64,000 nt of DNA from Macrostomum lignano (Eukaryota), in the NCBI GenBank assembly GCA_002269645.1, contig NIVC01002325.1, positions 119,587 to 183,586 on the forward strand, given 5' to 3'. The notes under the pieces are model-generated. The model was given only the letters and a program-made list of their open reading frames with translations, made no database searches and had not been told where the DNA came from. The position numbers and the translations under genes were made by a program. Positions 32,301 through 61,690 of the stretch are shown here, one piece after another (position 1 is the stretch's first letter; each line of letters opens with the position of its first letter).

Positions 32301-35300
32301 GATACTCAATTTGTGAATGGTGTTCAGTTTGTGAATGATGCTCAATTTGTGAATGCTGCTCAATTTGTGAATGAAGCTCAGCTTGTGAATGATGCTCAAT
32401 TTGTGAATGATACTCAATTTGTGAATGGCGCTCAATTTGTGAATGATGCTCAATTTGTGAATGATGCTCAGTTTGTCAATGATACTCAATTTGTGAATGA
32501 TACTCAATTTGTGAATGATGCTCAATTTGTGAATGATACTCAATTTGTGAATGATACTCAATTTGTGAATGATACTCAATTTGTGAATGGTGCTCAATTT
32601 GTGAATGAAGCTCAGTTTGTGAATGGTGATCAATTTGTGAATGATTCCCAATTTGTGAATGATGCTCAGTTTGTGAATGATGCTCAATTAGTGAATGATA
32701 CTCATTTTTGAATGATACTCAGTTTGTGAATGATGCTCAATTTGTGAATGATACTCAATTTGTGAATGATGCTCAGTTTTTGAATTATGCTCAGTTTGTG
32801 AATGATGCTCAATTTGTGAATGAAGCTCAGTTTGTGAATGGTGATCAATTTGTGAATGATTCCCAATTTGTGAATGATGCTCAGTTTGTGAATGATGCTC
32901 AATTAGTGAATGATGCTCAATTTGTGAATGAAGCTCAATTTGTGAATGGTGCTCAATTTGTGAATGGTGCTCAATTTGTGAATGATGCTCAGTTTGTGAA
33001 TGATACTCAATTTGTGAATGATGCTCAATTTGTGAATGATACTCAATTTGTGAATGATACTCAATTTGTGAATGATACTCAATTTGTGAATGGTGCTCAA
33101 TTTGTGAATGAAGCTCAGTTTGTGAATGGTGATCAATTTGTGAATGATTCCCAATTTGTGAATGATGCTCAGTTTGTGAATGATGCTCAATTAGTGAATG
33201 ATACTCATTTTTGAATGATACTCAATTTGTGAATGATGCTCAATTTGTGAATGATACTCAATTTGTGAATGATGCTCAGTTTGTGAATTATGCTCAGTTT
33301 GTGAATGATGCTCAATTTGTGAATGAAGCTCAGTTTGTGAATGGTGATCAATTTGTGAATGATTCCCAATTTGTGAATGATGCTCAGTTTGTGAATGATG
33401 CTCAATTAGTGAATGATACTCAATTTTTGTATGATACTCAATTTGTGAATGATGCTCAATTTGTGAATGATACTCAATTTGTGAATGGCGCTCAATTTGT
33501 GAATGATGCTCAATTTGTGAATGATGCTCAGTTTGTGAATGATACTCAATTTGTGAATGATACTCAATTTGTGAATGATGCTCAATTTGTGAATGATACT
33601 CAATTTGTGAATGATACTCAATTTGTGAATGGTGCTCAGTTTGTGAACGATGCTCAATTAGTGAATGATACTCAATTTTTGAATGATACTCAATTTGTGA
33701 ATGATGCTCAATTTGTGAATGATGCTCAATTAGTGAATGATACTCAATTTTTGTATGATACTCAATTTGTGAATGATGCTCAATTTGTGAATGATACTCA
33801 ATTTGTGAATGATGCTCAATTTGTGAATGATACTCAATTTGTGAATGGCGCTCAATTTGTGAATGATGCTCAATTTGTGAATGATGCTCAGTTTGTGAAT
33901 GATACTCAATTTGTGAATGATACTCAATTTGTGAATGATGCTCAATTTGTGAATGATACTCAATTTGTGAATGATACTCAATTTGTGAATGGTGCTCAGT
34001 TTGTGAACGATGCTTAATTAGTGAATGATACTCAATTTTTGAATGATACTCAATTTGTGAATGATGCTCAATTTGTGAATGATGCTCAATTTGTGAATGA
34101 TACTCAATTTGTGAATGGTGCTCAGTTTGTGAACGATGCTCAATTAGTGAATGATACTCAATTTGTGAATGATGCTCAATTTGTGAATGATGCTCAATTT
34201 GTGAATGATACTCAATTTGTGAATGGTGCTCAGTTTGTGAATGATGCTCAATTTGTGAATGATGCTAAATTTGTGAATGAAGCTCAGCTTGTGAATGATG
34301 CTCAATTTGTGAATGAAGCTCAATTTGTGAATGGTGCTAAATTTGTGAATGGTGCTCAATTTGTGAATGATGCTCAGTTTGTGAATGATACTCAATTTGT
34401 GAATGATACTCAATTTGTGAATGATGCTCAATTTGTGAATGATACTCAATTTGTGAATGATACTCAATTTGTGAATGGTGCTCAGTTTGTGAACGATGCT
34501 CAATTAGTGAATGATACTCAATTTTTGAATGATACTCAATTTGTGAATGATGCTCAATTTGTGAATGATGCTCAATTTGTGAATGATACTCAATTTGTGA
34601 ATGAAGCTCAGCTTGTGATAATGCTCAATTTGTGAATGAAGCTCAATTTGTGAATGGTGCTAAATTTGTGAATGGTGCTCAATTTGTGAATGAAGCTCAA
34701 TTTGTGAATGGTGCTCAATTTGTGAATGAAGCTCAGTTTGTGAATGGTGATCAATTTGTGAATGATTCCCAATTTGTGAATGATGCTCAGTTTGTGAATG
34801 ATGCTCAATTAGTGAATGATACTCATTTTTGAATGATACTCAATTTGTGAATGATGCTCAATTTGTGAATGATACTCAATTTGTGAATGATGCTCAGTTT
34901 GTGAATTATGCTCAATTTGTGAATGATGCTCAATTTGTGAATGAAGCTCAGTTTGTGAATGGTGATCAATTTGTGAATGATTCCCAATTTGTGAATGATG
35001 CTCAGTTTGTGAATGATGCTCAATTAGTGAATGATACTCAATTTTTGTATGATACTCAATTTGTGAATGATGCCCAATTTGTGAATGATACTCAATTTGT
35101 GAATGATGCTCAATTTGTGAATGATACTCAATTTGTGAATGATACTCAATTTGTGAATGGTGCTCAGTTTGTGAACGATGCTCAATTAGTGAATGATACT
35201 CAATTTTTGAATGATACTCAATTTGTGAATGATGCTCAATTTGCGAATGATGCTCAATTTGTGAATGATACTCAATTTGTGAATGGTGTTCAGTTTGTGA

Positions 35301-35634
35301 ATGATGCTCAATTTGTGAATGATGCTCAATTTGTGAATGAAGCTCAGCTTGTGAATGATGCTCAATTTGTGAATGATACTCAATTTGTGAATGGCGCTCA
35401 ATTTGTGAATGATGCTCAATTTGTGAATGATGCTCAGTTTGTCAATGATACTCAATTTGTGAATGATACTCAATTTGTGAATGGTGTTCAGTTTGTGAAT
35501 GATGCTCAATTTGTGAATGATGCTCAATTTGTGAATGAAGCTCAGCTTGTGAACGATGCTCAATTAGTGAATGATACTCAATTTTTGAATGAAGCTCAAT
35601 TTGTGAATGATGCTCAATTTGTGAATGATGCTTA
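29345..35634. repeat. 6.3-kb 18-bp satellite (TTTGTGAATGATGCTCAA)n with higher-order structure; one + frame reads (FVNDAQ)n
   Basis: About 350 units; diagnostic variants recur with ~1.65-kb spacing (TTTGCGAAT at ~30622 and ~32276). Confidence 0.97.
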
Positions 35635-35906
35635 ATTCAAGAGTCGTTTGCTCATTTCCCCCAGCAGTGACCATCACCATTGAGCAGCAGCATCTTTGTG
35701 GCCCAGGCAGTTCTGTGAGCCCGGCTGACGTGTAGAATCACCACCTAAAGCCAAATTAACAAAGACCCGTAAATGCAGCGGCAAACTTCAATAGAAATTC
35801 TCCAATCAGTTGAAAAATGCTGGGCGCCAGTCCAGAGGCGGTCAAGTGTATTCACAGCTTACTCCAGGTGGACATGGCACTGATAAGAACACCCCACTAA
35901 GGCCAG

Positions 35907-37660
35907 TTAAATGCTGATGGTCTTGAAGATGTTGAGGCCGTCCAGCGCGGTGCTGAGCACCAAGCCGGGAAGCTGCGGGTGCCAGTGTCCCTCCTTCATC
36001 TCCTGCTGGCCCATATGGATGAACAGCAGCTGCGGCGGCAGACCGGCTGTCGAGACGCCTTCGCAGGCGAGGTCCCACAGCGTCAGCTGGTTGTCCTCGG
36101 AGGTGGCCAGGAACACCGAGCTGTCCGTGGGGTGCCACTGCACCGAGGTGATCGGGCCCTTGTGGTAACTGCGGGTGGGGCGGTGTTGCGGTACATGTCG
36201 GTAGCCAGGGATAAGCAGCACTACCTGATATTGGGAAGGCACAACCCGATATTGGGGAGGCACTACCTGATGTTGGGGAGGCACAACCTGACATTGGGGA
36301 GGCACTACCTGATGTTGGGGAGGCACTACCTGATGTTGGGGAGGCACTACGAGCTACCTGATGTTGGGGAGGCACTACCTGATGTTGGGGAGGCACTACC
36401 TGATGTTGGGGAGGCACTACCTGATGTTGGGGAGGCACTACCTGATGTTGGGGAGGCACTACCTGATATTGGGGAGGCACTACCTGATGTTAGGGAGGCA
36501 CTGCCTGATTCGGGCACCCAGCAGCCAAGCTGCACCCACCTGAGTTCGCAGGCAGGCGGCGCCTCGCTGGCGAAGCGGCGCAGGTCCCAGACGCGCAGAG
36601 CGCAGTCGTCGCCGCCGCTGACGATGTACTGGGACTCCAGCCGGTTCCAGGCGATGACGTTCACGTCGCTGCCGTGGCAGTCCGGCCGGGTCAGCATGCA
36701 GGCCTTGTCGGGCTTGGCGCGCACGTCGAACACGCGGAGGCTGCGGTCGACGGAGCAGCCGGCCAGCACGCTGGCCTCGGTGGGCGACCACTGCAGGTCC
36801 TCCACCGAGCCGCTGTGGCCGGCCAGCGGCCGCGGGTCCACCCGCCAGCCGGCGCCGCCCTCGGCCGGCTGCCAGACGTGGATGGCGCCGGTGCAGTCGC
36901 CGCTGGCCAGGCGGCCGGGCACCAGGCGGCTCCAGTCCAGCCCGAAGCCCTCGGCCGAGTGGCCGCGGAAGGCGAACAGCGGCGCGGGCGACTCTGGCCG
37001 GCGGGTGAACTCGGTCAGCAGGTGGTGGTCGGCCACGGCGGTCAGGGCCTCGGTCAGGTCGAAGATGTACACAGCGCCCGCCTCAGACCAGGTGGCCGCC
37101 AGCGGCCGGCCCGTAACGTCCGAGGCTCGAATCCGGTTGACCGTCCGGTTGTGGCGGAGCTGCGCCACGGACACGTCGCCGCGTCGGTCCGCCCCCTCCT
37201 CGTCCGAGTCGTCTTCTGAGTCGGAGTCCTCGCCGTCCTCGCCGTCCTCGCCGTCCTCGCCGGCGCGCCGGCGCCGCATGGGGAACAGGCCGGCGGCGCG
37301 CATCACACAGACAGCGTTGCGGCCGGCCTCGGGGGCCTGCGTGCCGCACACCAGGAAGCAGCTCAGCGACCGCTCGGCGTCGTCAAAGTCGAAGGCGGCA
37401 CCACTGGCTGCGTTCTCCGGGTCGGGCAGCACATCGATGCTCAGGCAGGGCCACTCCACGCTCATCTGGTAGTACAGCTTGTAGGCCGTGCGGTCCATCA
37501 CCAGCTCCTCGTCCGGCCCGGGCTGCGGGTCGCCGCTGTTCGGCAGGTAGGGCCGCGCCGGCTCCTGCGGCTCCCCCTCTTCTGCCTCCTCGTCCAGCAT
37601 CTCCTCGTCATCACTGCCCTCTGCATCCTGCTGCTGCTCCGCGTCTCCTTCAGTTGTCAT
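35907..37660 (-). CDS. GRWD1: Glutamate-rich WD40 repeat protein 1 (Rrb1), two exons 37660..36540 and 36168..35907, 460 aa
   Basis: ELVMD..AY..Y....EWPCLSIDV, acidic loop, GHSAEGFGLDWS, GHSGSVEDLQWSP, HPTDSSVF..TSEDNQLTLWDL, LPPQLLFIHMGQ. GT..AG intron 36539..36169 restores the frame. Confidence 0.95.
36215..36510. repeat. 21-bp minisatellite inside the GRWD1 intron (GAGGCACTACCTGATGTTGGG)
   Basis: About 13 units within the 371-bp intron. Confidence 0.95.
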
Positions 37661-37689
37661 CTGGCAGCAATGTTCAGGAGGTAGATAAG

Positions 37690-38805: not shown

Positions 38806-39991
38806 TCATTTTTCATCAGCCACTTCGGAGTAGGGCGGCGGCGGCGGCGGCGGCTCCAGCGGGTCGGCAACAGGCGAGTACGGCGGCGGCTCCAGCGGTC
38901 GGGGCTGCGGGATTCGCAGCGACAGCGGCTCGGCCGAGGCCTCCGTGACGGCCGCCAGGCTGAGGCCGCCAGCCCGCCGTTCAGAGAGGAGCCGCCGGTA
39001 GAAGCCGAGCAGGCAGACGAGCTGCGCAGTGGACAGCAGCAGCGACAGGCACTCCACGACCGTCTTGGCCACGCCCAGGTAGAACACCGCCAGATAGGCC
39101 TGCAGACATGCCAGATTGGTAGGTCACATTTGTTTCAAGCTGCAGATCACACTTGACCCAAACAGCCAAAACCCAAACCCAAACAACTCTTAAGTGACGA
39201 CTTAAGAGACGTGGCAGATTACACCAGGTTCAAGCGGCAGGTCACACCTGGTTCATGTGACAGATCACATCTGGATTAAGCCGTATGTAACACCTGACTC
39301 AAGTAGATCACACCTGCTCAAGCAGATCACACCTGCTCAAGCAGATCACACCTGCTCAAGCAGATCACACCTGCTCAAGCAGATCACACCTGCTCAAGCA
39401 GATCACACCTGCTCAAGCAGATCACACCTGCTCAAGCAGATCACACCTGCTCAAGCAGATCACACCTGCTCAAGCAGCAGATCACACCTGCTCAAGCATA
39501 TCACACCTGGCTCAAGCATATCACACCTGGCTCAAGCAGATCACACCTGGCTCAAGCGGCAGATCACATCAGGTTAAAACGGCAGGTCACAGGCACAAAA
39601 CGAGTCGCACCTGCTCCCGCATCCGCATGCGAGTTCGCTCGTAAAGGCGCCGATTTTCGGCCAGAGTGGCCGCCTCAGCGGTGGCCGCAGCCGTCGTCAC
39701 CAGGAGGGCCGCAGCGGCGACCAGTCCGGCCGCCAGGCAGCGCCGGCGCAGCCGGTGGCGGGCGGTGGCGGCGGAGACGGCGAGGCCGCCAGACAGCAGC
39801 AGGACGGCGCCGCACCAAAGTCCGGTGCCGCGGATGGCGCAGCCGGAGCGCATGACGATGGCGAGGACCTCCAGCAGGGCCAGCGAGCAGCCGCAGAGCA
39901 CCGCCAGGGTGCCGAAATTCTTGTGCGCGCTGCGCTGCCTGACGGGGAACTGAGGCTCCTCAAGCATGACGGAACCTCCCTGCGGTGGCAT
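38806..39991 (-). CDS. Divergent MS4A-like four-TM protein, copy B; exons 39991..39611 and 39099..38806, ~224 aa, two PPPY motifs
   Basis: GTGLWCGAVLLLSGG and EAATLAENRRLYE (cf. [13 protein letters not shown] in copy F). Phase-0 GT..AG intron 39610..39100; TM4 lies in exon 2. Confidence 0.8.
39295..39570. repeat. 19-bp minisatellite inside the copy-B intron (GCAGATCACACCTGCTCAA)
   Basis: About 14 units. Confidence 0.95.
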
Positions 39992-41131
39992 GCACGAAGC
40001 GGAAGCAGCTGAATATTTCTGGCATGGAAGTTCATACTCGTAAATGATAAACAAGAAGCCGCTTGAAACCGCACGACAGGTCAAAATCAACAACCATACG
40101 GCAGTGCGCATTGGCAAACTGTTTATTTAGCAAAAGTACTGTTCAATTAAAACGGGTAAGCAGCTGGACAGAAGCAAGTCCCGATAAAAACGGTGCCAAG
40201 GCTAAGAAGCGCCCAAGACTCGTTTCAAACTCATTCCATCTTGCACAGGTAAGATAGGGAAGAATTGACTCCACACGACGCTAAAAAGTCGCCTAAGAGT
40301 CAATTCGAAGCTTTTTTATTGTCTGCGACTCTGGGGTGACCCAAGTGACTCTGGCGCTTCTATAATGACTCTTGGCCCGTAGAGTCGTATCTGAGCCGTA
40401 CTTGAGAGCCGTCACTTTATGAATTGCAATCACATTTCACATTTTAACAACTCTATTTAGTCTACTAAGGTCATTAGAGAGTTTAGTAATAACAAAACGA
40501 CTCTTGGACGACTTTTTCGCAACTCTCTTTATGATTCTAAGACTGCATCACTCGTGACTAAAAGTCGTCTCTCTGTGGCACAGCTGTTGGCAAGGACTCT
40601 AGCGACTCCTGTCTTTTCGCTTTCAATGGGAGCAGAAAGCTAAGAAAGCGAGATGCAGACAAGCCAAAGAGCATGAATGATGTATAAAAATAGATTGAAA
40701 CAGCCAAGGATGCGGAGTGAATGGCATTCAAAGCTGCAAAACAGATCAGCATATATTGAGTAAACATCAGCTTAATTTGAATTCGGCATGCAGAGCCAGT
40801 AAATATGAATAGCAAAACAATGCAACTATTGACAAGCGGAGTAACAGGGAACATTGGAAGCGGCGACTTGAAATGACAGCTAAAGACAAACAGAAATATT
40901 GTGGGAAAAGATTCGATGTAGACAAGGCAGAACTGCCAGAGACTCCGTTTAAAAAGTGCATCCTTGAAGAAGCATGGCGCCAATATCAAGGCTGAAGCAG
41001 AGGCAACACAGGGAGCAGTTGCCAAGCTCGCATAAAATTATTCCGAAGTTAAAAAAATTAATAAATTTCTTAGCATGCAGACGATTAAGTGAGGTCTGCG
41101 GTCAACCCGAGGACGCTATACCGGCAAAGCA

Positions 41132-42142
41132 TTATGGAGTCGGCCGGACCTTTTCAGCCTCACCAGCGCTCTGTTCGTACGGTGGAGGACAATCCGCGAA
41201 TTGATAGGCGCTTGAGCCGGCCTGCTGACCCGGATACCCGGCCTGCTGACCCGGATACCCGGCCTGCTGACCCGAATACCCGGCCTGCTGACCCGGATAC
41301 CCGGCCTGCTGACCCGGATACCCGGCCTGCTGACCCGGATACCCGGCCTGCTGACCCGGATACCCGGCCTGCTGACCCGGATACCCGGCCTGCTGACCCG
41401 GATACCCAGCCTGCTGACCCGGATACCCGGCCTGCTGACCCGGATACCCGGCCTGCTGACCCGGATACCCGGCCTGCTGACCCGGATATCCGGGCTGAGC
41501 CAAATAGATGACCTGCTGCGGCTGCTGGGAGCTTGCAACAGGCGGCACGCAGCAGCAGGAAGCGCGGCAGGCGAAGGCGGAGTGCACGATGGCCAGCACA
41601 AAGTCCAAGGCGCACAGCAGCGCGCAAACGACGCTGATGGCGTAGGCCTTGCGGAAGGCGACATCGACGTCATCGCGGGAGCCGCTGGTCGCGGTGTACT
41701 GATCCATCAGGTGCTGATTGAATACCGAAGTGACAGAGCTAGAGACCATGGCGAAGAAAGCCGCAACAGAGGCGATGATGGAGAGCACCAGGCAGGTGAT
41801 CACGCAGCCCAGGGCGCAGCCGCAGCCATTGCGGGCAGCCGACATTCCGGAGATGCCAGCGGCCATGACAAACGGGCCGGTCCAGAGGCCGGCGGAGGAA
41901 ACCCGAAAGTAGTAATACCCGCGCCTCTTCATCACAATGCTGAAGCCGTCGGCCAGGCCAAAAATGCCGATGACTAAGAGCAGACCGCCTGTCAGCAGCT
42001 GCAGTAAGCCCATGATGCGGTGGCCCCGCAGCACCCAGGGCGGCAGTCGGCTGGCATAGTTTGTGGGGCCGCTCGGGGCAGCCGGTGCCCCAGTCACCAC
42101 CTGCGGCGTCACGAGAGGCACCGCCTGACTCTGTGGCTGCTG
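41132..42142 (-). CDS. MS4A-like four-TM protein, copy C, with 13 x GYPGQQA and PPPY; no local start codon
   Basis: Intact ORF with four TM segments and [12 protein letters not shown]; the coding exon starts after a pyrimidine tract + CAG at 42143. Confidence 0.87.
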
Positions 42143-42589
42143 CTGCGGGAGATGGGGCGGAGCATGGATAGACTGGGTTGGCTCGCTACTGTTAGTGCTG
42201 ACCTGCTGAGTGAATCTGCACTGCCACCTCCCGCCCTCTGGACTCAGTGACTGCCTAAAGTAAAAATCCCAAATAACCTCGCCCACTCTCACTATCTCAA
42301 ACCTCATATCTCATTGTTGCACTTGATCTCAATCTCAACCGCATAATACATGAGTCATATGAGTCTAATAGAACATGATGCTTGAGAACAGCGAAGTAAC
42401 AGCTGAAAACAGGATATATTAATTGATAAACAGAAAGCAAAGCAAATTAAGTTAAATTGGGCGCAGCTTAAAAGCAGCTGAGCAAAATGAATGCGAATAA
42501 ATAATGCGAGAACAGGGCTTCTCGGAAGAGTGGGCGAAATTTTGAATGCAATGTAATACGGTAAGACATAAATAACCTGCTGGAATGCC

Positions 42590-43165
42590 CCCAAAGCAGC
42601 ATCCAATTATGCAATAAAACATCAGCTGATGCGAACAGCAGCACCCAATTATGCAATAAAACATCAGCTGATGTAAACAGCAGCATCCAATTATGCAATA
42701 AAACATCAGCTGATGCGAACAGCAGCATCCAATTATGCAATAAAGCATCAGCTGATGTAAACAGCAGCATCAAATTATGCAATAAAACATCAGCTGATGT
42801 AAACAGCAGCATCCAATTATGCAATAAAACATCAGCTGATGCGAACAGCAGCATCCAATTATGCAATAAAACATCAGCTGATGTAAACAGCAGCATCCAA
42901 TTATGCAATAAAACATCAGCTGATGTAAACAGCAGCACCCAATTATGCAATAAAACATCAGCTGATGTAAACAGCAGCATCAAATTATGCAATAAAACAT
43001 CAGCTGATGTAAACAGCAGCACCCAATTATGCAATAAAACATCAGCTGATGTAAACAGCAGCATCAAATTATGCAATAAAACATCTGCTGATGTGAACAG
43101 CAGCATCCAATTATGCAATAAAACATCAGCTGATGCGAACAGCAGCATCCAATTATGCAATAAAA
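42590..43165. repeat. 42-bp minisatellite
   Basis: (GCAGCATCCAATTATGCAATAAAACATCAGCTGATGTAAACA) x ~13-14. Confidence 0.95.
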
Positions 43166-43204
43166 CAAAACTGCGTATCTCGTAGCTTTGCCCCTTCTAT
43201 AATA

Positions 43205-43415
43205 CGAGGGCTGTCTCAAAAGTAGTATTACTTTTCAAAATAACTCGTTTTGATGATCGAAGTGACATCATTTCGCACAATTTTATAGCTTTAACTCTTC
43301 TCTATATAAAATCTTAACATGTTTTAAAATTCAGACAATTGAAAGAAAAGTTATGAACAAAAATGTAGCAGAAAATGATTTGCAGTAGCAAAAGTACTTT
43401 TGATTGAATGCACTT
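43205..43415. mobile_element. Mariner-type MITE remnant
   Basis: TA|CGAGGGCTGTCTCAAAAGT resembles the mariner end at ~16607..16626; degenerate opposite end near 43390..43415. Confidence 0.5.
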
Positions 43416-43551
43416 AGACTGGTTCGGCTGCTGTGACAAAGCGATATCTATTTAAAAACTTGAAGAAACATAAAACCAAAATAGTTTCCACTGGGCTTCA
43501 GCTTCACTGCTTTTTGTTCCCTCATTTTGCTCACGAATGTGCATTCAAGTG

Positions 43552-43925
43552 TTGCGGCGGTCACCCCTCAGAAGCCATGGCGGAGAAGGCGGTCAGACAG
43601 GTAGCAACGATGGACAGCCCCAGGCAGGTGACCACGCAGCCCAGGGTGCAGCGGCAGGCCTGCCTTGAAGCCATGAATCAGGAGATGCTGGCGCCGATGA
43701 AGAACGGACAGGCCCAGATTCCGCTGCCGAACAGGCTGAACTCGCCTCCAGCGTATTTGAGCTTCATCTTCTTGACGGTGTCGATGCTCAGGCCCACCTC
43801 GCTGAAGATGATGGTGAGGGCGCCGGTCACCAACTGGATGATGCCCATGTGATGATGCTCCTATTGTTGCCGGACGCCTCCGTGTCTGAGGGCGCCACCA
43901 TCACAACCCGCGGCGCAGGCTGCTC
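43552..43925 (-). pseudogene. MS4A-like pseudogene, copy D (TM1-TM3 only)
   Basis: MGIIQLVTG, SGIWACPFFIGASIS* (in-frame TGA) and [10 protein letters not shown]; frameshift before TM1 and truncation after TM3. Confidence 0.85.
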
Positions 43926-44003
43926 CTGAAGAAGACAGACGGACGGAACATTGCTGACAGATGGATAATGGTGCTAACCGAGGTGGAATGAAATATGGAT
44001 GCG

Positions 44004-44560
44004 TGCTAGCTATGGGGCTACTGATAGTAGGCTATTGCAGCTGTGCTAGCTATGGGGCTACTGATAGTAAGCTATTGCAGCTGTGCTAGCTATTGGGCTA
44101 CTGATAGTAGGCTATTGCAGCTGTGCTAGCTATGGGGCTACTGATAGTAGGCTATTGCAGCTGTGCTAGCTATTGGGCTACTGATAGTAGGCTATTGCAG
44201 CTGTGCTAGCTATTGGGCTACTGATAGTAGGCTATTTCAGCTGTGCTAGCTATTGGGCTACTGATAGTAGGCTATTGCAGCTGTGCTAGCTATGGGGCTA
44301 CTGATAGTAGGCTATTGCAGCTGTGCTAACTATGGGGCTACTGATAGTAGGCTATTGCAGCTGTGCTAGCTATTGGGCTACTGATAGTAGGCTATTGCAG
44401 CTGTGCTAACTATTGGGCTACTGATAGTAGGCTATTGCAGCTGTGCTAGCTATGGGGCTACTGATAGTAGGCTATTGCAGCTGTGCTAGCTATGGGGCTA
44501 CTGATAGTAGGCTATTTCAGCTGTGCTAGCTATTGGGCTACTGATAGTAGGCTATTGCAG
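44004..44560. repeat. 40-bp minisatellite upstream of copy D
   Basis: (CTGTGCTAGCTATGGGGCTACTGATAGTAGGCTATTGCAG) x ~14. Confidence 0.95.
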
Positions 44561-45153
44561 GTTCAGAATAAAAAAGTCCTCTGAACCAAACTGTTTAGAA
44601 TCTTCCATAGAAAAATCTATATTTCTGAGTTATTGAACTTTTAAGCTGGCGAGTCATCACAAACAGTTAAGAGAGCCTGAGATTTTCAATTTTGCGGTTA
44701 CACATTCAGTTGCGAGGCCAGACGAATGTTATAGTTTGCTAATCAAAGCTAAAAAAGACTGAAAAGTTTTGCTGAAACAGTGTCTGATAGATATACAGCT
44801 TAATTATAGGCTTGCCAAAGGCATGTGGAATAAAAGTGCATGGGCAGAGCGAATTTTAAGTCGGGATTCAATAATTATTTAATAAATTTTTGCAATAAAA
44901 AATTCCGCAGTTTCCGGGCATATCGGATCGAAGGAGCAGAAAAAATATGTAAAAATTTGGTGGCAAATTTGTTCATGGACTAAAGCCGGAACATAAAACA
45001 TCTTTGTGTGCAAGTTGGGCGAAAAATGCTGCCACTAAGGCCACAAGATACATGCCCGACCTGCAGCAGAAAAACTGGCGATAGGTAAAACAACGTGTAG
45101 AAAAAGTTTCACATCACAGCTGCAAGTCCAAAACAGGATGGCGCTTCAGAGCT

Positions 45154-46260
45154 TCACTTCCGAGCAGCTTCTGCCATGCTGGCCTCGTACGATGGCGGCG
45201 CATCCGGGATCCGGCCGCCCGTGGAGCTGCCCTGCGGACCCGGATATCCGCCCTGAGGACCCGGATATCCAGCCTGAGGACCCGGAAATCCGCCCTGAGG
45301 ACCTGAATATCCAGCCTGAGGCCCCGGATATCCAGCCTGAGGACCCGGATATCCAGCCTGAGGACCCGGATATCCAGCCTGAGGACCCGGATATCCAGCC
45401 TGAGGACCCGGATATCCAGCCTGAGGACCCGGATATCCAGCCCGAGGACCCGGATATCCGCCTTGAGGACCCGAATATCCAGCCTGAGGACCCGGATACC
45501 CAGTCTGAGGACCCGGATACCCGGCCTGCGGACCCGGATACCCAGTCTGAGGACCCGGATATCCAGCCTGTTGACCCGGATACCCGGCCTGTGGACCTGA
45601 ATACCCGGCCTGCGGGCCAGAGGAACTTCCAGGCTGGTTGGTGACCACATGCTGCTGATGCTGCCGCTGCTGTGTCTCGCTGCTTACAGCCGATGGCACA
45701 CAGCAGCAGGAGGCACAGCAGGCGAAGGCGGAGTGCACGCTGGCCACCGCCAGCTCGATGCCGCAGAGCAGCGCGCACACGATGCCGGTGCTGTAGACGA
45801 CGTGGTAGGCGGTGAAGTCGCTGCCGCTGCCAGCATTCTCATACAGGGTGCGGTTCTGCGCGACCGCAAACGCCTCCGTGATGATGGCAGAGAAGGCGGA
45901 GACGGCGGCGAGGATGGACAGCACGAGGCAGGTGACCACGCAGCCCAGGGGGCAGCAGCAGCCTGGGCGGGAGGCGATGATGCCGGAGATGCCGGCGGCT
46001 ATGAAGAACGGGCCGGCCCTGACGCCGCTGCCAAGCTGGCTCAGCTCGCTCTCGGCGCCGCTGTCTTTGTCCACCATCTTCTTGTCGGTGCCGATGACCA
46101 GACCGGCGATGCTGACGCCCATGGCGAAGATACCGACCAGCACCTGAATGATGCCCATGATGCGGAGGCCGCGCAGCACCCGAGCCGACACGCGGTCCAG
46201 GTAGTTGCCGGGGGTCGCCACCCGCGTGCCCGGCTGTTGAAGCTGATGTGACTGCTGCAT
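45154..46260 (-). CDS. MS4A-like four-TM protein, copy E, 368 aa, ~18 x GYPGPQA and PPSY
   Basis: Intact ORF; [45 protein letters not shown]. Confidence 0.88.
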
Positions 46261-46299
46261 GAAGCGAAGAATTGGTTAAATACTAGCATTCCCTGATCT

Positions 46300-46460
46300 C
46301 GCGGACTGAGAGGGTGCTGGCGTGATGGGGCTGAGAGGGTGCTGGTGTGATGGGGCTGAGAGGGTGCTGGCGTGATGGGACTGAGAGGGTGCTGGTGTGA
46401 TGGGGCTGAGAGGGTGCTGGCGTGATGGGGCTGAGAGGGTGCTGGCGTGATGGGGCTGAG
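46300..46460. repeat. 25-bp minisatellite upstream of copy E
   Basis: About 6 units of GAGAGGGTGCTGGCGTGATGGGGCT. Confidence 0.9.
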
Positions 46461-46606
46461 GATGCTGTTTCATAGATCTGGGGGCTACAAACTCAGGTTA
46501 AATATTTAAAACGAAGATTTAAATAAGGTAACCAGTCAAATAGGGTCATGACGACAAAGTTTTACAGGATGCTTTGAGAGTAAGTAGAAGTTTTGAATTT
46601 TCATTT

Positions 46607-46612
46607 TTTATT
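46607..46612 (-). terminator. Candidate polyadenylation signal (AATAAA) of copy F
   Basis: AATAAA on the minus strand ~430 nt after the copy-F stop. Confidence 0.4.
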
Positions 46613-47042
46613 TAAAAAATAGTTTTTAATAGTAGTATGAAAGATGCAGCGCACGCTATAAAATATCACGCATTCATGCAGCCCGCATCATGCCGGTCAA
46701 CTTCAGCTGAGGCCGGTCATAAAAGTCCATTAAAGTACAATCTCCGCAGCTAAAGTGAATGAGGACCGAAGTCGCATGAGATGACACGCTTGATTTAGTT
46801 CAACACGAAAAGCATGATTTCAGCTGTCAATAGGAGGTCGTACACAGCGTCTGCAGAAAGAGAACTTACAGAAATAAACAGAATGAAAAATATTGCAACA
46901 AGAAGTTCGCGCCATATTCGGCAATTAGAGTGCGTCTGGACCCACTGAATCTTGCTGACGGCTTAGAATTTGGATCAGCTTTCAAGTGGGAGGTGTCTTT
47001 TAAACAACCGTCTGATCCAATGTACGCGCCTTGATAGCAGTT

Positions 47043-48035
47043 TCAAAATTTCACCGCGTGACCTTCAATGCTGGATTCATAGGGCGGCGGAGCTGTGCTG
47101 CTGCCGGCCTGCGGACCCGGATACCCGGCCTGCGGACCCGGATACCCGGCCTGCGGACCCGGATACCCGGCCTGCTGACCCGGATACCCAGCCTGCTGAC
47201 CCGTATACCCGGCCTGCGGACCCGGATACCCAGCCTGCGGACCCGGATACCCGGTCTGCTGGACAGGATACCCGGGTGGCGGTGGGTGGCCTGACTGAGG
47301 AGCAAAGATGACCTGCTGGCCAGGGTAGACTACGACCTGGCCAGGGTAGGGCCCTGCATGCTCCGTGACGTAGGCGCGCTGGCCGGTCATGAAAACCTGC
47401 TGGTGCGGCTGCTGCTGGTTGCTCACAGCTGATGGCACGCAGCAGCAGGAGGCGCGGCAGGCGAAAGCGGAGTGCACGATGGCCAGCACGAACTCGAAGG
47501 CGCACAGCAGCACACAGGCGATGCCGGTACCGTACACGGCCCGAAAGACGTCTTCAGAGCTGCTACTTGAGTACGACTTGGAGTACTCGTACATTCTGCG
47601 GTTCTCAGCAGCCACAATGGCCTCGGTGACCATGGCGGAGAAGGCCAAGACCGAGGCGATGATGGAGAACACCAGGCAGGTGACCACGCAGCCCAGGGTG
47701 CAGCCGCCACCGGGACGACCTGCCGAGAGCCCGGAGATGCCGGCAGCGATGAAGAACGGGCCGGACCAGACGCCGCCGCCGACCAGGCTGAACTGAGTCG
47801 ACAGGCCGTACCGAGTGATGATTTTCTCGCCAGAGCCGACGGCCAGGCCCGCAATGTTGATGATGATGACGAGAGCGCCAGTCAGCAGCTGCAGGAAGCC
47901 CATGATGCGGTGGGCCCGCAGTACCGAAGGCGGCACGCGGCTCGCGTAGCTGCCAGGGGCCGCGGCAGAGGGTGGCGCCACCACCTGCGGCACTGGTGAC
48001 ACCCCGGGGCCAGGCTGTTGCTGTGGCTGCTGCAT
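47043..48035 (-). CDS. MS4A-like four-TM protein, copy F, ~330 aa, 8 x GYPG(P/Q)QA and PPPY
   Basis: Intact ORF from ATG 48035 (MQQPQ); [14 protein letters not shown] and [20 protein letters not shown]. Confidence 0.88.
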
Positions 48036-48169
48036 CAAAAGCAAGATTCACATTTCTATTTCAATCTTTTCGAACCCTAAAACTGAAGTGGAAAAGGGAA
48101 TGCGTCCATCCCCAGTCAGCAAGACGGCCGCCAGAAGTGCATGGCGCATCTGAGGACTTTGGGTGGGAC

Positions 48170-49265
48170 TTGTGCAGCACTGAGACTACTGGGGCCCACA
48201 GGACAGCACTGAGACTACTGGGGCTCACAGGACAGCACTGAGACTACTGGGGCCCACAGGACAGCACTGAGACTACTGGGGCTCACAGGACAGCACTGAG
48301 ACTACTGGGGCCCACAGGACAGCACTGAGACTACTGGGGCCCACAGGACAGCACTGAGACTACTGGGGCTCACAGGACAGCACTGAGACTACTGGGGCTC
48401 ACAGGACAGCACTGAGACTACTGGGGCCCACAGGACAGCACTGAGACTACTGGGGCCCACAGGACAGCACTGAGACTACTGGGGCCCACAGGACAGCACT
48501 GAGACTACTGGGGCCCACAGGACAGCACTGAGACTACTGGAGCTCACAGGACAGCACTGAGACTGCTGGGGCCCACAAGACAGCACTGAGACTACTGGGG
48601 CCCACAGGACAGCACTAAGACTACTGGGGCCCACAGGACAGCACTGAGACTACTGGGGCTCACAGGACAGCACTGAGACTACTGGGGCTCACAGGACAGC
48701 ACTGAGACTACTGGGGCTCACAGGATAGCACTGAGACTGCTAAGGCTCACAGGACAGCACTGAGACTACTGGGGCTCACAGGACAGCACTGAGACTACTG
48801 GGGCTCACAGGACAGCACTGAGACTACTGGGACTCACAGGACAGCACTGAGACTACTGGGGCTCAAAGGACAGCACTGAGACTACTGGGGCTCACAGGAC
48901 AGCACTGAGACTACTGGGGCTCACAGGACAGCACTGAGACTACTGGGGCTCACAGGACAGCACTGAGACTACTGGGGCTCACAGGACAGCACTGAGACTA
49001 CTGGGGCTCACAGGACAGCACTGAGACTACTGGGGCCCACAGGACAGCACTGAGACTACTGGGGCTCACAGGACAGCACTGAGACTACTGGGGCTCACAG
49101 GACAGCACTGAGACTACTGGGGCTCACAGGACAGCACTGAGACTACTGGGGCTCACAGGACAGCACTGAGACTACTGGGGCTCACAGGACAGCACTGAGA
49201 CTACTGGGGCTCACAGGACAGCACTGAGACTACTGGGGCTCACAGAACAGCACTGAGACTACTGG
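48170..49265. repeat. 29-bp minisatellite upstream of copy F
   Basis: (CACAGGACAGCACTGAGACTACTGGGGCT) x ~37. Confidence 0.97.
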
Positions 49266-51262
49266 GTAGCAGAGATTTATAGGAAATGAGAGCCTGTTGG
49301 TAAGATAGTGTAACTTAAATGAAATGATGGCACTAAAAATTGACTCTAAGCAAATGAAACATCAGACAATATAAGCAGTGAATAGGTGAATAGCATGTAT
49401 TGTTACTTCATAATTAAATCTAACAAAATTCAAGTATATGTGCCACAAGATTAAAAAAAATGGTGTACCAAATGTACACCAGCTGTCACAAGTGTTTACC
49501 AGAAATTTCTAGCATAAATGACATGATCTTAAGTGTAGAACACAGGCTGCTATTAGCTTGGGATGCAACAATCATGCACACCTACACCTCAAGTCATCTG
49601 CATATCCCTGCTATCACTTCCCATGTAGCTGCTATTTTAGCCAAGGCTTACAAATCAGCCAAGTATACTGATTACTAACCTAGGCAACTACCACAGCTCC
49701 CAACTGGTCAGTATAGACTCTAGGTACCTTTGGTCCCCATGCCCTAGAGCTTATTATTGCTCTTATGGCTTGAATCTAGGCCCATTCTAGCAAGCAGAGG
49801 TCACAAAGGCACTTTTTACTAGTAAATTGGGATAGCCCCTTTTATAGCTTTTATAATATTATAGCTTTTATAATATTAAGATGACCTTTATCAATCTCCA
49901 TTTTTAATTCTTTGTTTACTTTTTACTTAATATATTTTTACAATTTAAATGGAATAATGAATATATATTTTTGCTATATTTTATGTTCATTAAAATAATA
50001 ATGACTTATGTTATACTGGTATGTATACTTGTAGCATGCCATAGTTTAGAAAGTGACATACGCTAAGATTTTCTAGTATACAATAGAGATACTTATTTTT
50101 TTCAGTATATATCAATGTATATTCTGATATATATGCTGCATATGATACATATGTATAGGTTATATGATGTGCCTTAAAATATATTATGCAAATACAAAAA
50201 AGCATTTAACTTTGGGTATATATACCCTACATTCTGGATCATGTAATATATATCCAAAAATTGGCCTAGCATGCCAAAAGTTAGATGTACACAATTGGCA
50301 TACATTACTCTTAAGAAAGTAGTATATATGCATACCTGGCATGCACTTTCTAAAATCACATGGGAGTTAGTATTAAGTTAAGTTAAAAGAACAATGAAAA
50401 ATTCATTTTTAAGTATAAATTTTAAGCTTTCTGGTTTTAAATCATTCAAACTATAGCATTTTACATTGAAATTAGTATAAGCATAAATGAAAAAAAAATT
50501 GATGAAATTATGAGCCAAAAAGGGTCCTTTATGCAACACAGAAAGGTCATTCATTGTTGCATACAAAAAAGGTATTAATTGTCATAATACTATATTGGCC
50601 TAGATTTGAGAGTGTAGATGTGCACTCAATTTTTTTGGTATGCATTTGAAATTATTCAATTTTTATTTGGGCATGCACTTAGCATGATCCAGACTGTGGA
50701 TGACATAGGCAGGCCCCCTAGTAAAAACATTTTTAGTCCAAAAAATGTTTGACTAATAATAGGGTTAGACTACTAGGCCTTAGCTAAATAATATCAAGCT
50801 TGTTTGAAAAATATTAATGCTGGTTAAATAAGCATTGCCTTAAAAACAAGCTAGGCCCTAGCATAGGCTCATTCTAGATAAGATAGATATATTTAGAAAA
50901 TAGAAAAAAGTCAATATTTTTGCTTGCCATTCATTGCCTTATTAGCCATTTTTTGCCAATGGCAAATTTTTTAAATTTGTAATATACAATCTAAGAATAA
51001 ATGAATGGGAAAATGTTAAATTAGTATGTTATCAATTGGCAAAAAGTCATTTTTGTAAAAATTCAGACATTTTTCTAAGCAAAAGACATCATTAAGTTTG
51101 TGTACTTTTAAAAACAAATAGAAAGCTTTGGAAGGTTGAAACAAACTATAGATAAAATTATAGTACTTGAATAATCAGATAAAAACATTAGTGACTATAT
51201 AATCTATTATATTTTTAATACATTAGTACCTCAAAGTTATTGAATTGACAGTAAAAAATATG

Positions 51263-56115: not shown

Positions 56116-56213
56116 GGGGGTGAGAACTATTGAAATCTCTGAGTCTATTGAAAGACTTCAGGCTCCATGAGGGAATTTAGAATCTGTAAACAGGACTTCA
56201 CGATCTTAGCATC

Positions 56214-58140
56214 TATTATGGAACTTAGGGATCTATAATGGAACTTGGGGATCTATAATGGAACTTAGGGATCTATTATGGAACTTGGGGATCTATAATG
56301 GAACTTGGGGATCTATTATGGAACTTGGGGATCTATAATGGAACTTAGGGATCTATAATGGAACTTGGGGATCTATAATGGAACTTAGGGATCTATTATG
56401 GAACTTGGGGATCTATAATGGAACTTAGGGATCTATTATGGAACTTGGGGATCTATTATGGAACTTGGGGATCTATAATGGAACTTGGGGATCTATTATG
56501 GAACTCGGGGATCTACTCGTATTATCGAACTTGGGGATCTATTATGGAACTTGGGATCTATTATGGAACTTAGGGATCTATTATGGAACTTCGGGATCTG
56601 TCATGGAACTTGGGGATCTATTATGGAACTTCGGGATCTGTCATGGAACTTGGGGATCTATTATGGAACTTCGGGATCTGTCATGGAACTTGGGGATCTA
56701 TTATGGAACTTCGGGATCTGTCATGGAACTTGGGGATCTATTATGGAACTTGGGGATCTATTATGGAACTTCGGGATCTATTATGGAACTTCGGGATCTG
56801 TCATGGAACTTGGGGATCTATTATGGAACTTCGGGATCTGTCATGGAACTTGGGGATCTATTATGGAACTTCGGGATCTGTCATGGAACTTGGGGATCTA
56901 TTATGGAACTTCGGGATCTGTCATGGAACTTGGGGATCTATTATGGAACTTCGGGATCTGTCATGGAACTTGGGGATCTATTATGGAACTTCGGGATCTG
57001 TCATGGAACTTGGGGATCTATTATGGAACTTGGGGATCTGTCATGGAACTCGGGGATCTATTATGGAACTTGGGGATCTATTATGGAACTTGGGGATCTA
57101 TTATGGAACTTGGGGATCTATTATGGAACTTCGGGATCTGTCATGGAACTTGGGATCTATTATGGAACTCGGGATCTATTATGGAACTTGGGGATCTATT
57201 ATGGAACTTGGGGATCTATTATGGAACTTGGGGATCTATCATGGAACTCGGGATCTATTATCGAACTTGGGGATCTATTATGGAACTTGGGGATCTATTA
57301 TGGAACTTGGGGATCTATTATGGAACTTCGGGATCTGTCATGGAACTTGGGGATCTATTATGGAACTTCGGGATCTGTCATGGAACTTGGGGATCTATTA
57401 TGGAACTTCGGGATCTGTCATGGAACTTGGGGATCTATTATGGAACTTCGGGATCTGTCATGGAACTTGGGGATCTATTATGGAACTTGGGGATCTGTCA
57501 TGGAACTCGGGGATCTATTATGGAACTTGGGGATCTATTATGGAACTTGGGGATCTATTATGGAACTTGGGGATCTATTATGGAACTTCGGGATCTGTCA
57601 TGGAACTTGGGATCTATTATGGAACTCGGGGATCTATTATGGAACTTGGGGATCTATTATGGAACTTGGGGATCTATTATGGAACTTGGGGATCTATCAT
57701 GGAACTCGGGGATCTATTATCGAACTTGGGGATCTATTATGGAACTTGGGGATCTATTATGGAACTTGGGGATCTATTATGGAACTTCGGGATCTGTCAT
57801 GGAACTTGGGGATCTATTATGGAACTTCGGGATCTGTCATGGAACTTGGGGATCTATTATGGAACTTGGGGATCTATTATGGAACTTGGGGATCTATTAT
57901 GGAACTTCGGGATCTGTCATGGAACTTGGGGATCTATTATGGAACTTGGGGATCTGTTATGGAACTTGGGGATCTATTATGGAACTTGGGATCTGTCATG
58001 GAACTTGGGGATCTATTATGGAACTTGGGGATCTATTATGGAACTTGGAGATCTATTATGGAACTTGGGGATCTATTATGGAACTTGGGGATTTATTATG
58101 GAACTTGGGGATCTATCATGGAACTTGGGGATCTATCATA
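56214..58140. repeat. ~1.9-kb 20/21-bp satellite (GGAACTTGGGGATCTATTAT)n
   Basis: Direct reading; two alternating unit variants. Confidence 0.97.
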
Positions 58141-61389: not shown

Positions 61390-61690
61390 TCATCCGCTGC
61401 TGCATGCACTGCTGCTGCTGCGTGGCTGGCTGTATTTGCAGCAGCAGGAGGCGCGGCAGACGTTGCAACTGTGCACCAAGGCGATGACCAGGCCGAAGGC
61501 TAGCAGCAGGAGCAGATCAGGCTGGTTGCAGGCAGCGACTCGACGATCATGGCGGTGAAGGCCATGAGAGCGTTCAGGCAGCTCAGCACCAGGCAGGCCA
61601 CCACGCCGCACTTTGTGCCGGCACGCCGGCCAGCAGTAAGAAGGTCTGACGTCAGACCAGACGCCACCGGCCGCCAGCGAGCATCCGTTG
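61390..61690 (-). pseudogene. Degraded MS4A-like fragment, copy H
   Basis: GGVWS, CGVVACLVLS and LVIALVHSCNVCRASCCC lie in different frames, with internal deletions. Confidence 0.7.

What the first reader, a model, noticed from the sequence alone, without database searches (positions are those of the whole stretch)
42142..48035. Paralogues start at a phase-0 acceptor and may take their initiator Met from a spliced leader or a shared first exon
Seen on the minus strand: C reads CTCCCGCAG|CAG CAG CCA CAG with no ATG, and D reads TCTTCTTCAG|GAG CAG CCT with no ATG at the homologous point. F (TTTTGATGCAG|CAG CCA CAG) and E (TTCGCTTCATGCAG|CAG TCA) have a pyrimidine tract + CAG at the same position. 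Adding ATG to C gives MQQPQ, identical to F's N-terminus. E's start lies only ~350 bp below F's candidate poly(A) signal. Established: flatworm spliced leaders end in AUG that can serve as the initiator. Inference, two testable models: (a) an SL-resolved polycistronic receptor array whose Met comes from the leader; (b) one upstream promoter/exon spliced to alternative terminal exons, the reverse of a protocadherin/UGT1-type cluster.
Basis: partly seen in the sequence, partly recalled or inferred. Interest (0 to 1): 0.78.

Follow-up and report, generated by a model that had tools for sequence, protein, structure and literature searches.

The report
Flatworm genes borrowing leader's start codon
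This is a tandem cluster of four-pass membrane-protein genes in the flatworm Macrostomum lignano. At least one copy has no start codon of its own and almost certainly takes it from the trans-spliced leader RNA, a mechanism already known in flatworms and already implied by the public annotation of this locus.

Summary
On the minus strand, C (exon start 42142) and D (43925) begin directly after a pyrimidine tract plus CAG, with no ATG at the point where F (48035) and E (46260) have one.

The window is the last 64 kb of Macrostomum lignano contig NIVC01002325.1. This species' spliced leader ends in ATG.

GenBank gives these genes 5'-partial coding regions that start inside the same CAG runs: C at 42136, E at 46251 and F at 48032. 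In the mirror copy of the locus, five adjacent genes (F', E', D', C', B') carry one transcriptional-unit name, Mlig001419 g1-g5.

Comparison of three copies adds new evidence:
- The in-frame upstream ATG of C (42307) is put out of frame in one copy.
- F has CTG instead of ATG in a third copy.
- Neighbour B has ATG in two copies and a strong acceptor (ctttgCAG|) at the same codon in the third.

Model (a), trans-splicing with a leader-donated Met and probably a polycistron, is therefore well supported for C. Leader-donated Met is optional for E and F, which keep their own ATG. D is a pseudogene. Model (b), a shared cis exon, has no support. The proteins are CD20/MS4A-like; no evidence here shows they are receptors.

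This is a good example of a known mechanism, not a new one. I saw no RNA reads directly.

The parts
47043..48035 (-). Gene F. Intronless CD20/MS4A-like protein of 330 aa from its own ATG (48035-48033), followed by CAG CAG (48032-48027). It has a C-terminal PQAGYPG heptad array and a PPPY motif. The GenBank CDS is 5'-partial and starts at 48032.
   Evidence: fold and family
46607..46612 (-). AATAAA poly(A) signal of F, 347 nt upstream of E's ATG. A 155-nt minisatellite (46306-46460) lies in between.
45154..46260 (-). Gene E. 368 aa from its own ATG (46260-46258), then CAG CAG (46257-46252). The GenBank CDS is 5'-partial and starts at 46251, directly after the second CAG. The predicted product with the SL AUG is M-SHQLQQ...
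43560..43928 (-). D, a pseudogene with a retained consensus acceptor cttcttCAG| (CAG at 43928-43926, exon start 43925). The N-terminal frame stops after 32 codons. The TM frame is interrupted and truncated. GenBank keeps only a 56-aa ORF (43848-43678).
41132..42145 (-). Gene C. The ORF has no ATG at the start. A run of three phase-0 CAG acceptors (42145-42137) is preceded by ccgccccatctcccg. The GenBank CDS is 5'-partial, starting at 42136 here and one CAG earlier in copy L002. The next in-frame ATG is codon 44, inside TM1.
42143..42307 (-). Upstream in-frame extension of C with an ATG at 42307. It is judged to be non-coding outron: in copy L002 a 2-nt insertion puts this ATG out of frame, so that copy has no in-frame ATG upstream of the ORF.
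40122..40127 (-). Distal AATAAA of C. It lies 136 nt upstream of B's ATG (39991) and 169 nt upstream of B's annotated 5' end (39958), which is operon-like spacing.
38806..39991 (-). Gene B, TMEM176A-like, with two exons (intron 39610-39100). Its own ATG is at 39991. The GenBank 5' end is at 39958, after cttgag|. In copy L003 the ATG is replaced by a strong acceptor, ctttgCAG|, at the same codon.
48175..49266 (-). 29-nt minisatellite (about 38 copies) immediately upstream of F. Comparable but unrelated minisatellites fill the other spacers (44003-44560, 42595-43167, 39211-39591).

Best explanation
F-E-D-C-B is a same-strand tandem cluster of CD20/MS4A-like genes in Macrostomum lignano. Its pre-mRNAs are processed by spliced-leader (SL) trans-splicing.

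The 35-nt SL ends in AUG and is joined to one of several tandem phase-0 CAG acceptors at the very start of each ORF. Everything upstream, the outron, is discarded, including E's and F's own ATG when a downstream CAG is used.

For C the SL AUG is the only available initiator for the conserved N-terminus. The product is M-(Q)(Q)PQSQ..., depending on which CAG is used. For E and F the leader AUG and the gene's own ATG give almost the same protein, so both routes work.

The genes are most likely transcribed, at least in part, as one precursor (an operon in the M. lignano sense) and resolved by 3' cleavage plus trans-splicing.

Shown: the sequence anatomy, the organism, the annotation boundaries and names, the differences between copies, and the family.

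Inferred: that the annotated 5' ends are SL junctions (from the published annotation method), that the SL AUG is translated, and that transcription is polycistronic.
For: - Organism and locus: NIVC01002325.1, Mlig_3_7 assembly.
- The SL is CGGTCTCTTACTGCGAAGACTCAATTTATTGCATG, with a trans-acceptor motif [T/C]TNCAG. About 30% of genes are trans-spliced and 15% lie in operons. Repeats inflate operon spacers, so the operon criterion is a repeat-adjusted distance under 1 kb (PMC8629364).
- In the annotation, gene 5' ends are cut at peaks of SL-containing reads (PMC5730564).
- 5'-partial coding regions start right after an AG in phase 0: C at 42136, C' one CAG earlier, E at 46251, B at 39958.
- Mlig001419 g1-g5 are five adjacent, dissimilar genes under one transcriptional-unit (TU) name in the mirror copy. 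Window C and B are Mlig011713 g2 and g3.
- No conserved genomic ATG exists for C.
- The N-terminal 43 codons of C have dN/dS 0.42 against F, lower than the TM core at 0.62.
- F'' in L003 has CTG in place of ATG with the ORF intact. B'' in L003 has a stronger pyrimidine tract plus CAG| exactly where the other copies have ATG.
- Distances from poly(A) signal to the next acceptor are about 136-350 nt, or under 1 kb after subtracting minisatellites.
- Use of the SL AUG as initiator is established in flatworms by Cheng et al. 2006, as cited in PMC12582326 and PMC9851317.
Against: - I could not see any SL-containing read or cDNA. No RNA-derived contig was reachable.
- The annotation boundaries are noisy. 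Identical sequences in different copies carry different 5' ends. Six boundaries fall directly after a genomic ATG or CTG rather than an AG: F in all three copies, E in two copies and B' in one. A related paralogue's protein, P0020, shows the same pattern. RNA-seq reads were mapped with up to 1000 multiple placements (PMC5730564), so junctions cannot be assigned to one copy.
- In L003, F'' and E'' carry different TU names. The TU in L002 could be a read-through or assembly merge.
- Window C does have an in-frame upstream ATG that would work on an unspliced RNA.
- The CAG-run acceptor of C (ccgCAG) fits the published motif only partly.
Confidence: 0.7

Rival explanations
1. The genes are trans-spliced but not polycistronic. 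Each gene has its own promoter in the repeat-rich spacer. The SL only trims a monocistronic outron and supplies C's AUG. The single transcriptional unit (TU) in the annotation is a read-through or assembly merge.
For: - Most trans-spliced M. lignano genes are not in operons (PMC8629364).
- In L003, F'' and E'' carry separate TU names.
- GRWD1, the next gene downstream, is a separate TU.
- The spacers are 0.8-1.4 kb raw, and canonical poly(A) signals follow F, E and C.
Against: - Five dissimilar adjacent genes share one TU name in L002, and C and B share one in the window.
- The C poly(A) signal lies only 136-169 nt from B's start.
- Repeat-adjusted spacers are under 1 kb.
Confidence: 0.2
2. 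C is not leader-dependent. It starts at the upstream ATG (42307) or at Met44 in TM1, or it is a decaying copy. Under this reading the annotated 5' ends are artefacts of cross-mapping or of SL trimming.
For: - Window and L003 C have an in-frame ATG at -165.
- Boundary noise and boundaries directly after ATG show that the annotation can mislead.
- D shows that copies in this array do die.
Against: - In L002 the upstream ATG is out of frame and no in-frame ATG precedes the ORF.
- The ORF is intact in all three copies, at 283-336 codons.
- The N-terminal 43 codons evolve like coding sequence and carry the family motif YASRxPxxVLRxH.
- Reads starting CAGCCACAGAGT or CCACAGAGT are specific to C-type genes, and every C copy lacks an ATG at the ORF start.
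Confidence: 0.07
3. One upstream promoter and a first exon ending in ATG are cis-spliced alternatively to F, E, D or C, as a reversed protocadherin/UGT1-type cluster.
For: Only the anatomy supports it: phase-0 acceptors at the start of each ORF.
Against: - No exon or gene is annotated in the 10 kb upstream of F in any copy, although the annotation is RNA-seq-guided.
- There is no minus-strand ATG|GTRAG site in the whole window.
- The coding regions are left 5'-partial rather than joined to an exon.
- F, E and C have their own stop codon and poly(A) signal.
- The organism has an SL that does exactly this job.
Confidence: 0.03

Closest known systems
Schistosoma mansoni mRNAs that need the SL 3'-terminal AUG as initiator Met (Cheng et al. 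2006, J Biol Chem 281:733; cited in PMC12582326 and PMC9851317)
   Same: The flatworm SL ends in AUG. The acceptor is in phase 0. The ORF has no usable AUG of its own.
   Different: The species is a free-living macrostomid. Here the evidence is annotation plus comparison of copies, not cDNA or translation assays. Sister paralogues and copies keep or regain their own ATG at the same codon.
Macrostomum lignano operons and transcriptional units (Wudarski et al. 2017, PMC5730564; Ustyantsev & Berezikov 2021, PMC8629364)
   Same: Same-strand genes, downstream genes trans-spliced, repeat-rich spacers under 1 kb after repeat subtraction, and one TU name covering g1-g5.
   Different: Published operons are enriched in conserved, stem-cell-related genes. 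This one would consist of lineage-specific tandem paralogues, including a pseudogene.
NAGNAG tandem 3' splice sites
   Same: CAGCAG(CAG) runs in which the annotated junctions differ by 3 nt between copies and the frame is kept.
   Different: Here the junctions are in trans-splicing and sit at the first codons. The result is a variable number of N-terminal Gln residues after the leader Met. Use of each site is inferred, not counted.
Dinoflagellate tandem gene arrays and retrogenes with relic spliced leaders
   Same: Intronless tandem copies in an organism with SL trans-splicing.
   Different: Tested and not met. The 45 nt upstream of F, E, B, C and D resemble the SL no more than background ATG-ending 45-mers do.
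MS4A/CD20/TMEM176 four-pass membrane proteins (Pfam PF04103)
   Same: Four long helices. The best structural matches are to the FcεRI β chain (MS4A2). Relatives pass the Pfam cut-off. UniRef names the neighbour B 'Transmembrane protein 176A'.
   Different: These proteins carry a long C-terminal (P/Q)QAGYPG heptad array of variable copy number plus a PPxY motif. The window proteins themselves score just below the Pfam cut-off.

Membership tests
mRNA initiated at the flatworm SL 3'-terminal AUG | The organism's SL exon ends in AUG | tested here: met
   The organism was identified as M. lignano. The SL sequence ending in ATG is given in PMC8629364 and PMC5173321. No SL gene lies in the window itself.
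mRNA initiated at the flatworm SL 3'-terminal AUG | The mature mRNA's 5' end lies at an AG acceptor with no cis donor upstream | tested here: met
   The evidence is indirect. GenBank 5'-partial coding regions start right after an AG at C (42136 and one CAG earlier in L002), E (46251) and B (39958). For F the boundary follows ATG or CTG, so F is inconclusive.
mRNA initiated at the flatworm SL 3'-terminal AUG | SL-containing reads or cDNA joined at that site | not testable with these tools
   No RNA-derived contigs could be reached. Only the published method says that boundaries come from SL reads (PMC5730564).
mRNA initiated at the flatworm SL 3'-terminal AUG | The acceptor is in phase 0 with the ORF, with no stop in between | tested here: met
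   All CAGs of the runs in C, E and F, the D acceptor and the B acceptor are in frame.
mRNA initiated at the flatworm SL 3'-terminal AUG | No genomic AUG is available for the conserved N-terminus | tested here: met
   Met for C: there is none in L002, the -165 ATG is not conserved in frame, and the next ATG is codon 44. Met for F'' in L003, which has CTG. Not met for window E and F, which have their own ATG.
mRNA initiated at the flatworm SL 3'-terminal AUG | Translation from the SL AUG is demonstrated | not testable with these tools
   This needs N-terminal proteomics, ribosome profiling or a reporter. There is only indirect support: dN/dS is 0.42 over the 43 N-terminal codons.
M. lignano operon (criteria of PMC8629364) | Adjacent same-strand genes, the downstream ones trans-spliced, with a repeat-adjusted spacer under 1 kb | tested here: met
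   All genes are on the minus strand. Stop-to-start spacers are about 780-1420 nt raw, and about 630-850 nt after subtracting minisatellites. The C poly(A) signal lies 136-169 nt from B. Trans-splicing is inferred from the annotation.
M. lignano operon (criteria of PMC8629364) | One precursor transcript spans the genes | tested here: inconclusive
   TU Mlig001419 covers g1-g5 in L002, and Mlig011713 covers at least C and B in the window. F'' and E'' have different TU names in L003. No reads were seen.
Variable-exon cluster with a shared cis exon (protocadherin/UGT1 type, reversed) | A common exon with a donor site spliced in cis to each variable exon | tested here: not met
   No annotated exon lies within 10 kb upstream in three copies. 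There is no minus-strand ATG|GTRAG site in the window.
Retrogene with relic spliced leader | A degenerate SL sequence immediately upstream of the ORF | tested here: not met
   Local alignment scores of 8-12 compare with a background mean of 12 and a 95th percentile of 18.
CD20-like / MS4A family (PF04103) | Pfam model at or above the gathering score | tested here: inconclusive
   Window proteins score 18.7-25.9 bits against a cut-off of 27.9; F has no hit. Precomputed PF04103 is listed for P0003 and P0011. Seven of 10 profile-found relatives pass the cut-off.
CD20-like / MS4A family (PF04103) | A four-helix membrane fold matching solved MS4A members | tested here: met
   The model has pLDDT 72.5 and four long helices. 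The top PDB fold hits are the FcεRI β chain (8k7t_B, 8y81_B), with TM-score 0.71-0.73 on the target and E = 5e-3.

The most novel reading that the evidence does not exclude
The genomic start codon and a phase-0 trans-splice acceptor are interchangeable at one and the same codon among very recent gene copies. B has ATG in two copies and, in the third, a strengthened pyrimidine tract plus CAG|. F has ATG or CTG. C and D have CAG. E and F keep both an ATG and downstream CAGs.

Because the leader always brings an AUG, start codons would become dispensable. Genes could then toggle quickly between promoter-driven, self-initiated expression and operon or SL-dependent expression without changing the protein.

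The annotated 5' ends that sit directly after ATG or CTG would then reflect allele-specific trans-splicing, or rare TG acceptors, rather than artefacts.
Probability: 0.3. Interest if true: 0.55.

Novelty: new member of a known kind. Interest (0 to 1): 0.3.

Why it matters
The finding gives a clean, checkable example in a transgenic model flatworm of a gene (C) that seems to depend on the leader's AUG. Sister copies beside it keep their own ATG, which makes a natural control set. A Macrostomum reporter with the C upstream region and an ATG-less GFP would test directly whether the conserved flatworm SL AUG is used as initiator.

The finding also matters for annotation. Gene finders that require an ATG will miss or truncate such genes. 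The GenBank models here are all 5'-partial, and their 5' ends are blurred by cross-mapping between near-identical copies.

It does not reveal a new mechanism.

Tried and rejected
- **Relic-SL or retrogene origin of the intronless copies.** The upstream 45-mers are no more SL-like than background. Rejected.
- **An SL RNA gene in the window.** No match to the SL 3' half with up to 3 mismatches, and no Rfam family in the window.
- **Direct RNA evidence.** Exact-protein look-ups for E, F and G found nothing outside the NCBI genome. Leader-Met versions may not be looked up. The gene IDs occur in no searchable paper or held supplement.
- **Shared ATG-exon donor for model (b).** None on the minus strand.
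- **Sigma-70 promoter and terminator scan.** Irrelevant for a eukaryote; ignored.
- **PDB sequence search.** No hit; the fold search was needed instead.
- **Trimming details of the annotation pipeline.** I looked in PMC5730564 and PMC5173321 for details that would explain the 5' ends directly after ATG. They are not given.


Full report
**What is there**

The minus strand of 38.8-48.0 kb carries a head-to-tail row of related genes.
- F: 47043-48035.
- E: 45154-46260.
- D: about 43560-43925.
- C: 41132-42142.
- B, a more distant two-exon relative: 38806-39991.
- An unrelated GRWD1 homologue follows, with its first long exon at 36347-37660.

F, E and C are intronless. They encode four-pass proteins with a conserved cytosolic N-terminus (YASRxPxxVLRxHRIMG), a [14 protein letters not shown] motif after TM4, and a tail of (P/Q)QAGYPG heptads. 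The heptads are encoded by a 21-nt tandem repeat, and the tail ends in a PPxY motif. Each spacer holds a different minisatellite.

**Check of the observation**

- C reads ccgCAGCAGCAGCCACAG. Its first CAG (42145-42143) aligns with the ATG of F (ttttgATGCAGCAGCCACAG).
- D reads cttcttCAG|GAGCAGCCT.
- E reads cttcATGCAGCAGTCA.
- F's AATAAA lies 347 nt upstream of E's ATG.

Three qualifications apply.
- D is a pseudogene. The frame entered from the acceptor stops after 32 codons, the transmembrane frame has two stops, and TM4 and the tail are missing.
- In E and F the CAGs are also ordinary Gln codons behind the gene's own ATG, and an in-frame stop lies 15-18 nt upstream of that ATG.

**Where the window comes from**

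A protein search returned only Macrostomum lignano entries. The exact locus is NIVC01002325.1 of assembly GCA_002269645.1 (Mlig_3_7). The window is the last 64 kb of that contig.

Two further copies of the array exist.
- L002 is on the same contig in the opposite orientation.
- L003 is on NIVC01000140.1.

The window and L002 are arms of a very large inverted duplication. Window 1-9347 is 99% identical to the reverse complement of 17331-26673, centred near 13337.

**What is known for this species**

- The M. lignano spliced leader (SL) is CGGTCTCTTACTGCGAAGACTCAATTTATTGCATG. It therefore ends in ATG, and this is its only ATG.
- The enriched trans-acceptor motif is [T/C]TNCAG.
- About 30% of genes are trans-spliced and about 15% are placed in operons.
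- Repeats inflate operon spacers, so a repeat-adjusted threshold of 1 kb is used (PMC8629364).
- In the GenBank annotation, RNA-seq-assembled transcriptional units (TUs) were cut into genes at peaks of SL-containing reads and at poly(A) sites. ORFs were then called with TransDecoder (PMC5730564).
- Use of the flatworm SL 3' AUG as initiator Met is established. Cheng et al. 2006 reported it in frame in 28% of S. mansoni trans-spliced transcripts and required by more than 40 cDNAs, as cited in PMC9851317 and PMC12582326.

**What the annotation says about this locus**

The annotated coding regions of F, E, C and B are 5'-partial in every copy where they are annotated. D is annotated only as a complete 56-aa ORF.

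In window coordinates the starts are:
- C at 42136, directly after the third CAG.
- E at 46251, directly after the second CAG.
- B at 39958, after cttgag|.
- F at 48032, directly after its own ATG.

In L002, C' starts one CAG earlier (QPQSQ...).

Every boundary that follows an AG is in phase 0 with the ORF.

In L002 the five adjacent and mutually dissimilar genes are named BOX15_Mlig001419 g1 (F'), g2 (E'), g3 (D'), g4 (C') and g5 (B'). This means they were cut from one transcriptional unit. In the window, C and B are Mlig011713 g2 and g3. In L003, F'' and E'' have different TU names. GRWD1 is a separate unit, Mlig002290.

**New comparative evidence**

1. The upstream in-frame ATG of C is not conserved. 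In L002 a 2-nt insertion between that ATG and the CAG run shifts it out of frame. The C frame in L002 then has a stop at -117, no upstream ATG, and its next in-frame ATG at codon 44 inside TM1.
2. The 43 codons of C before that Met align with F without frame breaks. Their dN/dS is 0.42, lower than the TM core at 0.62. They carry the family's N-terminal motif. Translation must therefore begin upstream of them.
3. In L003 the start codon of F is CTG instead of ATG, while the 351-codon frame is intact.
4. In B, the window has cttccgcttcgtgcATG|CCACCG and L002 has ...cgttcATG|CCACCG. L003 has ctttctcttctttgCAG|CCACCG over the same length. That is a pyrimidine-richer tract plus CAG at exactly the codon where the others have ATG. 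With the leader's AUG the protein is unchanged (MPPQGG...).
5. A UniRef model from the earlier assembly, SSLQPPQGG..., is a read-through of this CAG allele.

Across paralogues and copies, the codon before the conserved N-terminus is therefore ATG, CTG or CAG. This is what one expects if the leader can supply the Met.

**Operon question**

The spacing fits the published criteria.
- The distance from F's poly(A) signal to the E acceptor is about 350 nt, of which 155 nt is minisatellite.
- The distance from E's signal to D is 958 nt, of which 558 nt is minisatellite.
- C's distal AATAAA lies 136-169 nt from B's start.

Together with the single TU name in L002 this makes a polycistronic precursor likely but not proven. 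TU assembly can merge read-through transcripts, and L003 is split.

**Model (b)**

- No exon is annotated within 10 kb upstream of F in any copy.
- The minus strand of the whole window has no ATG|GTRAG site.
- F, E and C each have their own stop codon and poly(A) signal.

I give this model about 3%.

**What the proteins are**

- Pfam gives sub-threshold CD20-like hits for E and C.
- A profile of the cores finds 651 relatives, and 7 of 10 sampled pass PF04103.
- UniRef names the B cluster 'Transmembrane protein 176A'.
- An AlphaFold model (pLDDT 72.5, four long helices) matches the FcεRI β chain (MS4A2) best.

They are MS4A/CD20-like proteins. Nothing here shows they are receptors.

**Unexplained**

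Six annotated 5' ends lie directly after a genomic ATG or CTG rather than an AG: F in all three copies, E in two copies and B' in one. The protein P0020 of another paralogue shows the same pattern.

For B and for GRWD1, a sister copy has an AG at that very position (L003 ttgcag|c against L002 ttgctg|c). Cross-mapping of SL reads between copies can therefore produce such boundaries, because RNA-seq mapping allowed up to 1000 placements (PMC5730564). For E and F no CAG allele is in the assembly.

Three explanations remain open: an unassembled allele, over-trimming of reads that begin with the leader's last bases, or rare TG acceptors next to the CAG run.

**Verdict**

The main interpretation is right in substance for C, optional for E and F, and moot for D. 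The alternative model lacks support. The mechanism is known and the public annotation already encodes it, so the interest is modest. The ATG/CTG/CAG interchange between copies is a small new point worth a read-level check.

Noticed in passing
window 27817-28665 (+): A further paralogue (G), about 52% identical to the complete protein P0004 (MENPTYASRVP...). It has no in-frame ATG between the stop at 27814 and the conserved TYASRVP. CTG stands where P0004 has ATG, directly after a phase-0 AG (gccaag|CTGGAGAAG, exon start 27889). It is not annotated in the protein collection.
   Followed up: partly
window 1-26673 and L002: Window 1-9347 is a 99% identical inverted copy of 26673-17331, centred near 13337. 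The window's gene array and the L002 array (contig 96215-117213) are the two arms of a giant inverted duplication at the end of contig NIVC01002325.1. The arms differ by 0-3%. This could be a real palindrome or a head-to-head join of haplotypes or homeologues.
   Followed up: partly
window 48032, and 46257 equivalents in L002/L003; L002:16079: Annotated 5'-partial coding regions begin directly after a genomic ATG or CTG: F in three copies, E in two, B' in one. The same pattern appears in protein P0020 of another paralogue. Likely causes are cross-mapping of leader reads between copies or a trimming artefact. A rare TG acceptor is not excluded.
   Followed up: partly
window 41217-41497, 45231-45612, 47104-47275: The 21-nt coding repeat, (P/Q)QAGYPG heptads, varies in copy number between the three copies. 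ORF lengths are F 330/330/351, E 368/333/361 and C 336/283/315 codons. The 147-nt 'intron' in the GenBank model of window C lies inside the repeat, has no GT-AG model that reproduces the product, and looks like a transcript-to-genome length mismatch.
   Followed up: partly
C-termini of F (about 47070), E (about 45190), C (about 41180) and B (about 38830): A PPxY motif (PPPY, PPSY, PPPY; two in B) follows the repeat tail. These are possible WW-domain (Nedd4-type ligase) ligands. This was not tested.
   Followed up: no
L003:17815-17823 vs L002:18175-18183 and window about 37665-37675: The GRWD1 homologue has a good out-of-frame acceptor, ttgcag|cCAGATGACA, in L003. In L002 and the window the same position reads ttgctg, yet L002 carries the same annotated 5' end. 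This is a clear case of a boundary transferred between copies.
   Followed up: partly
window 48083-48100 (-): The consensus-like acceptor cccttttccacttcag| lies 48 nt upstream of F's ATG. Leader AUG + TTT TAG would give a 2-codon ORF. It could be an alternative trans-splice site that leaves F's own ATG in use. It is not annotated.
   Followed up: no
window 29345-35637: A 6.3-kb satellite of an 18-nt unit (about 350 copies) lies between paralogue G and GRWD1. Many other minisatellites occur across the window, for example 5421-7022, 8589-9834 and 56211-58136.
   Followed up: no
window 61390-64000 (-): More distant multi-exon CD20-like genes, including P0011 (199 aa, 5'-partial). A UniRef model of 580 aa (P0021) fuses several of them, which is probably a gene-fusion artefact.
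   Followed up: no
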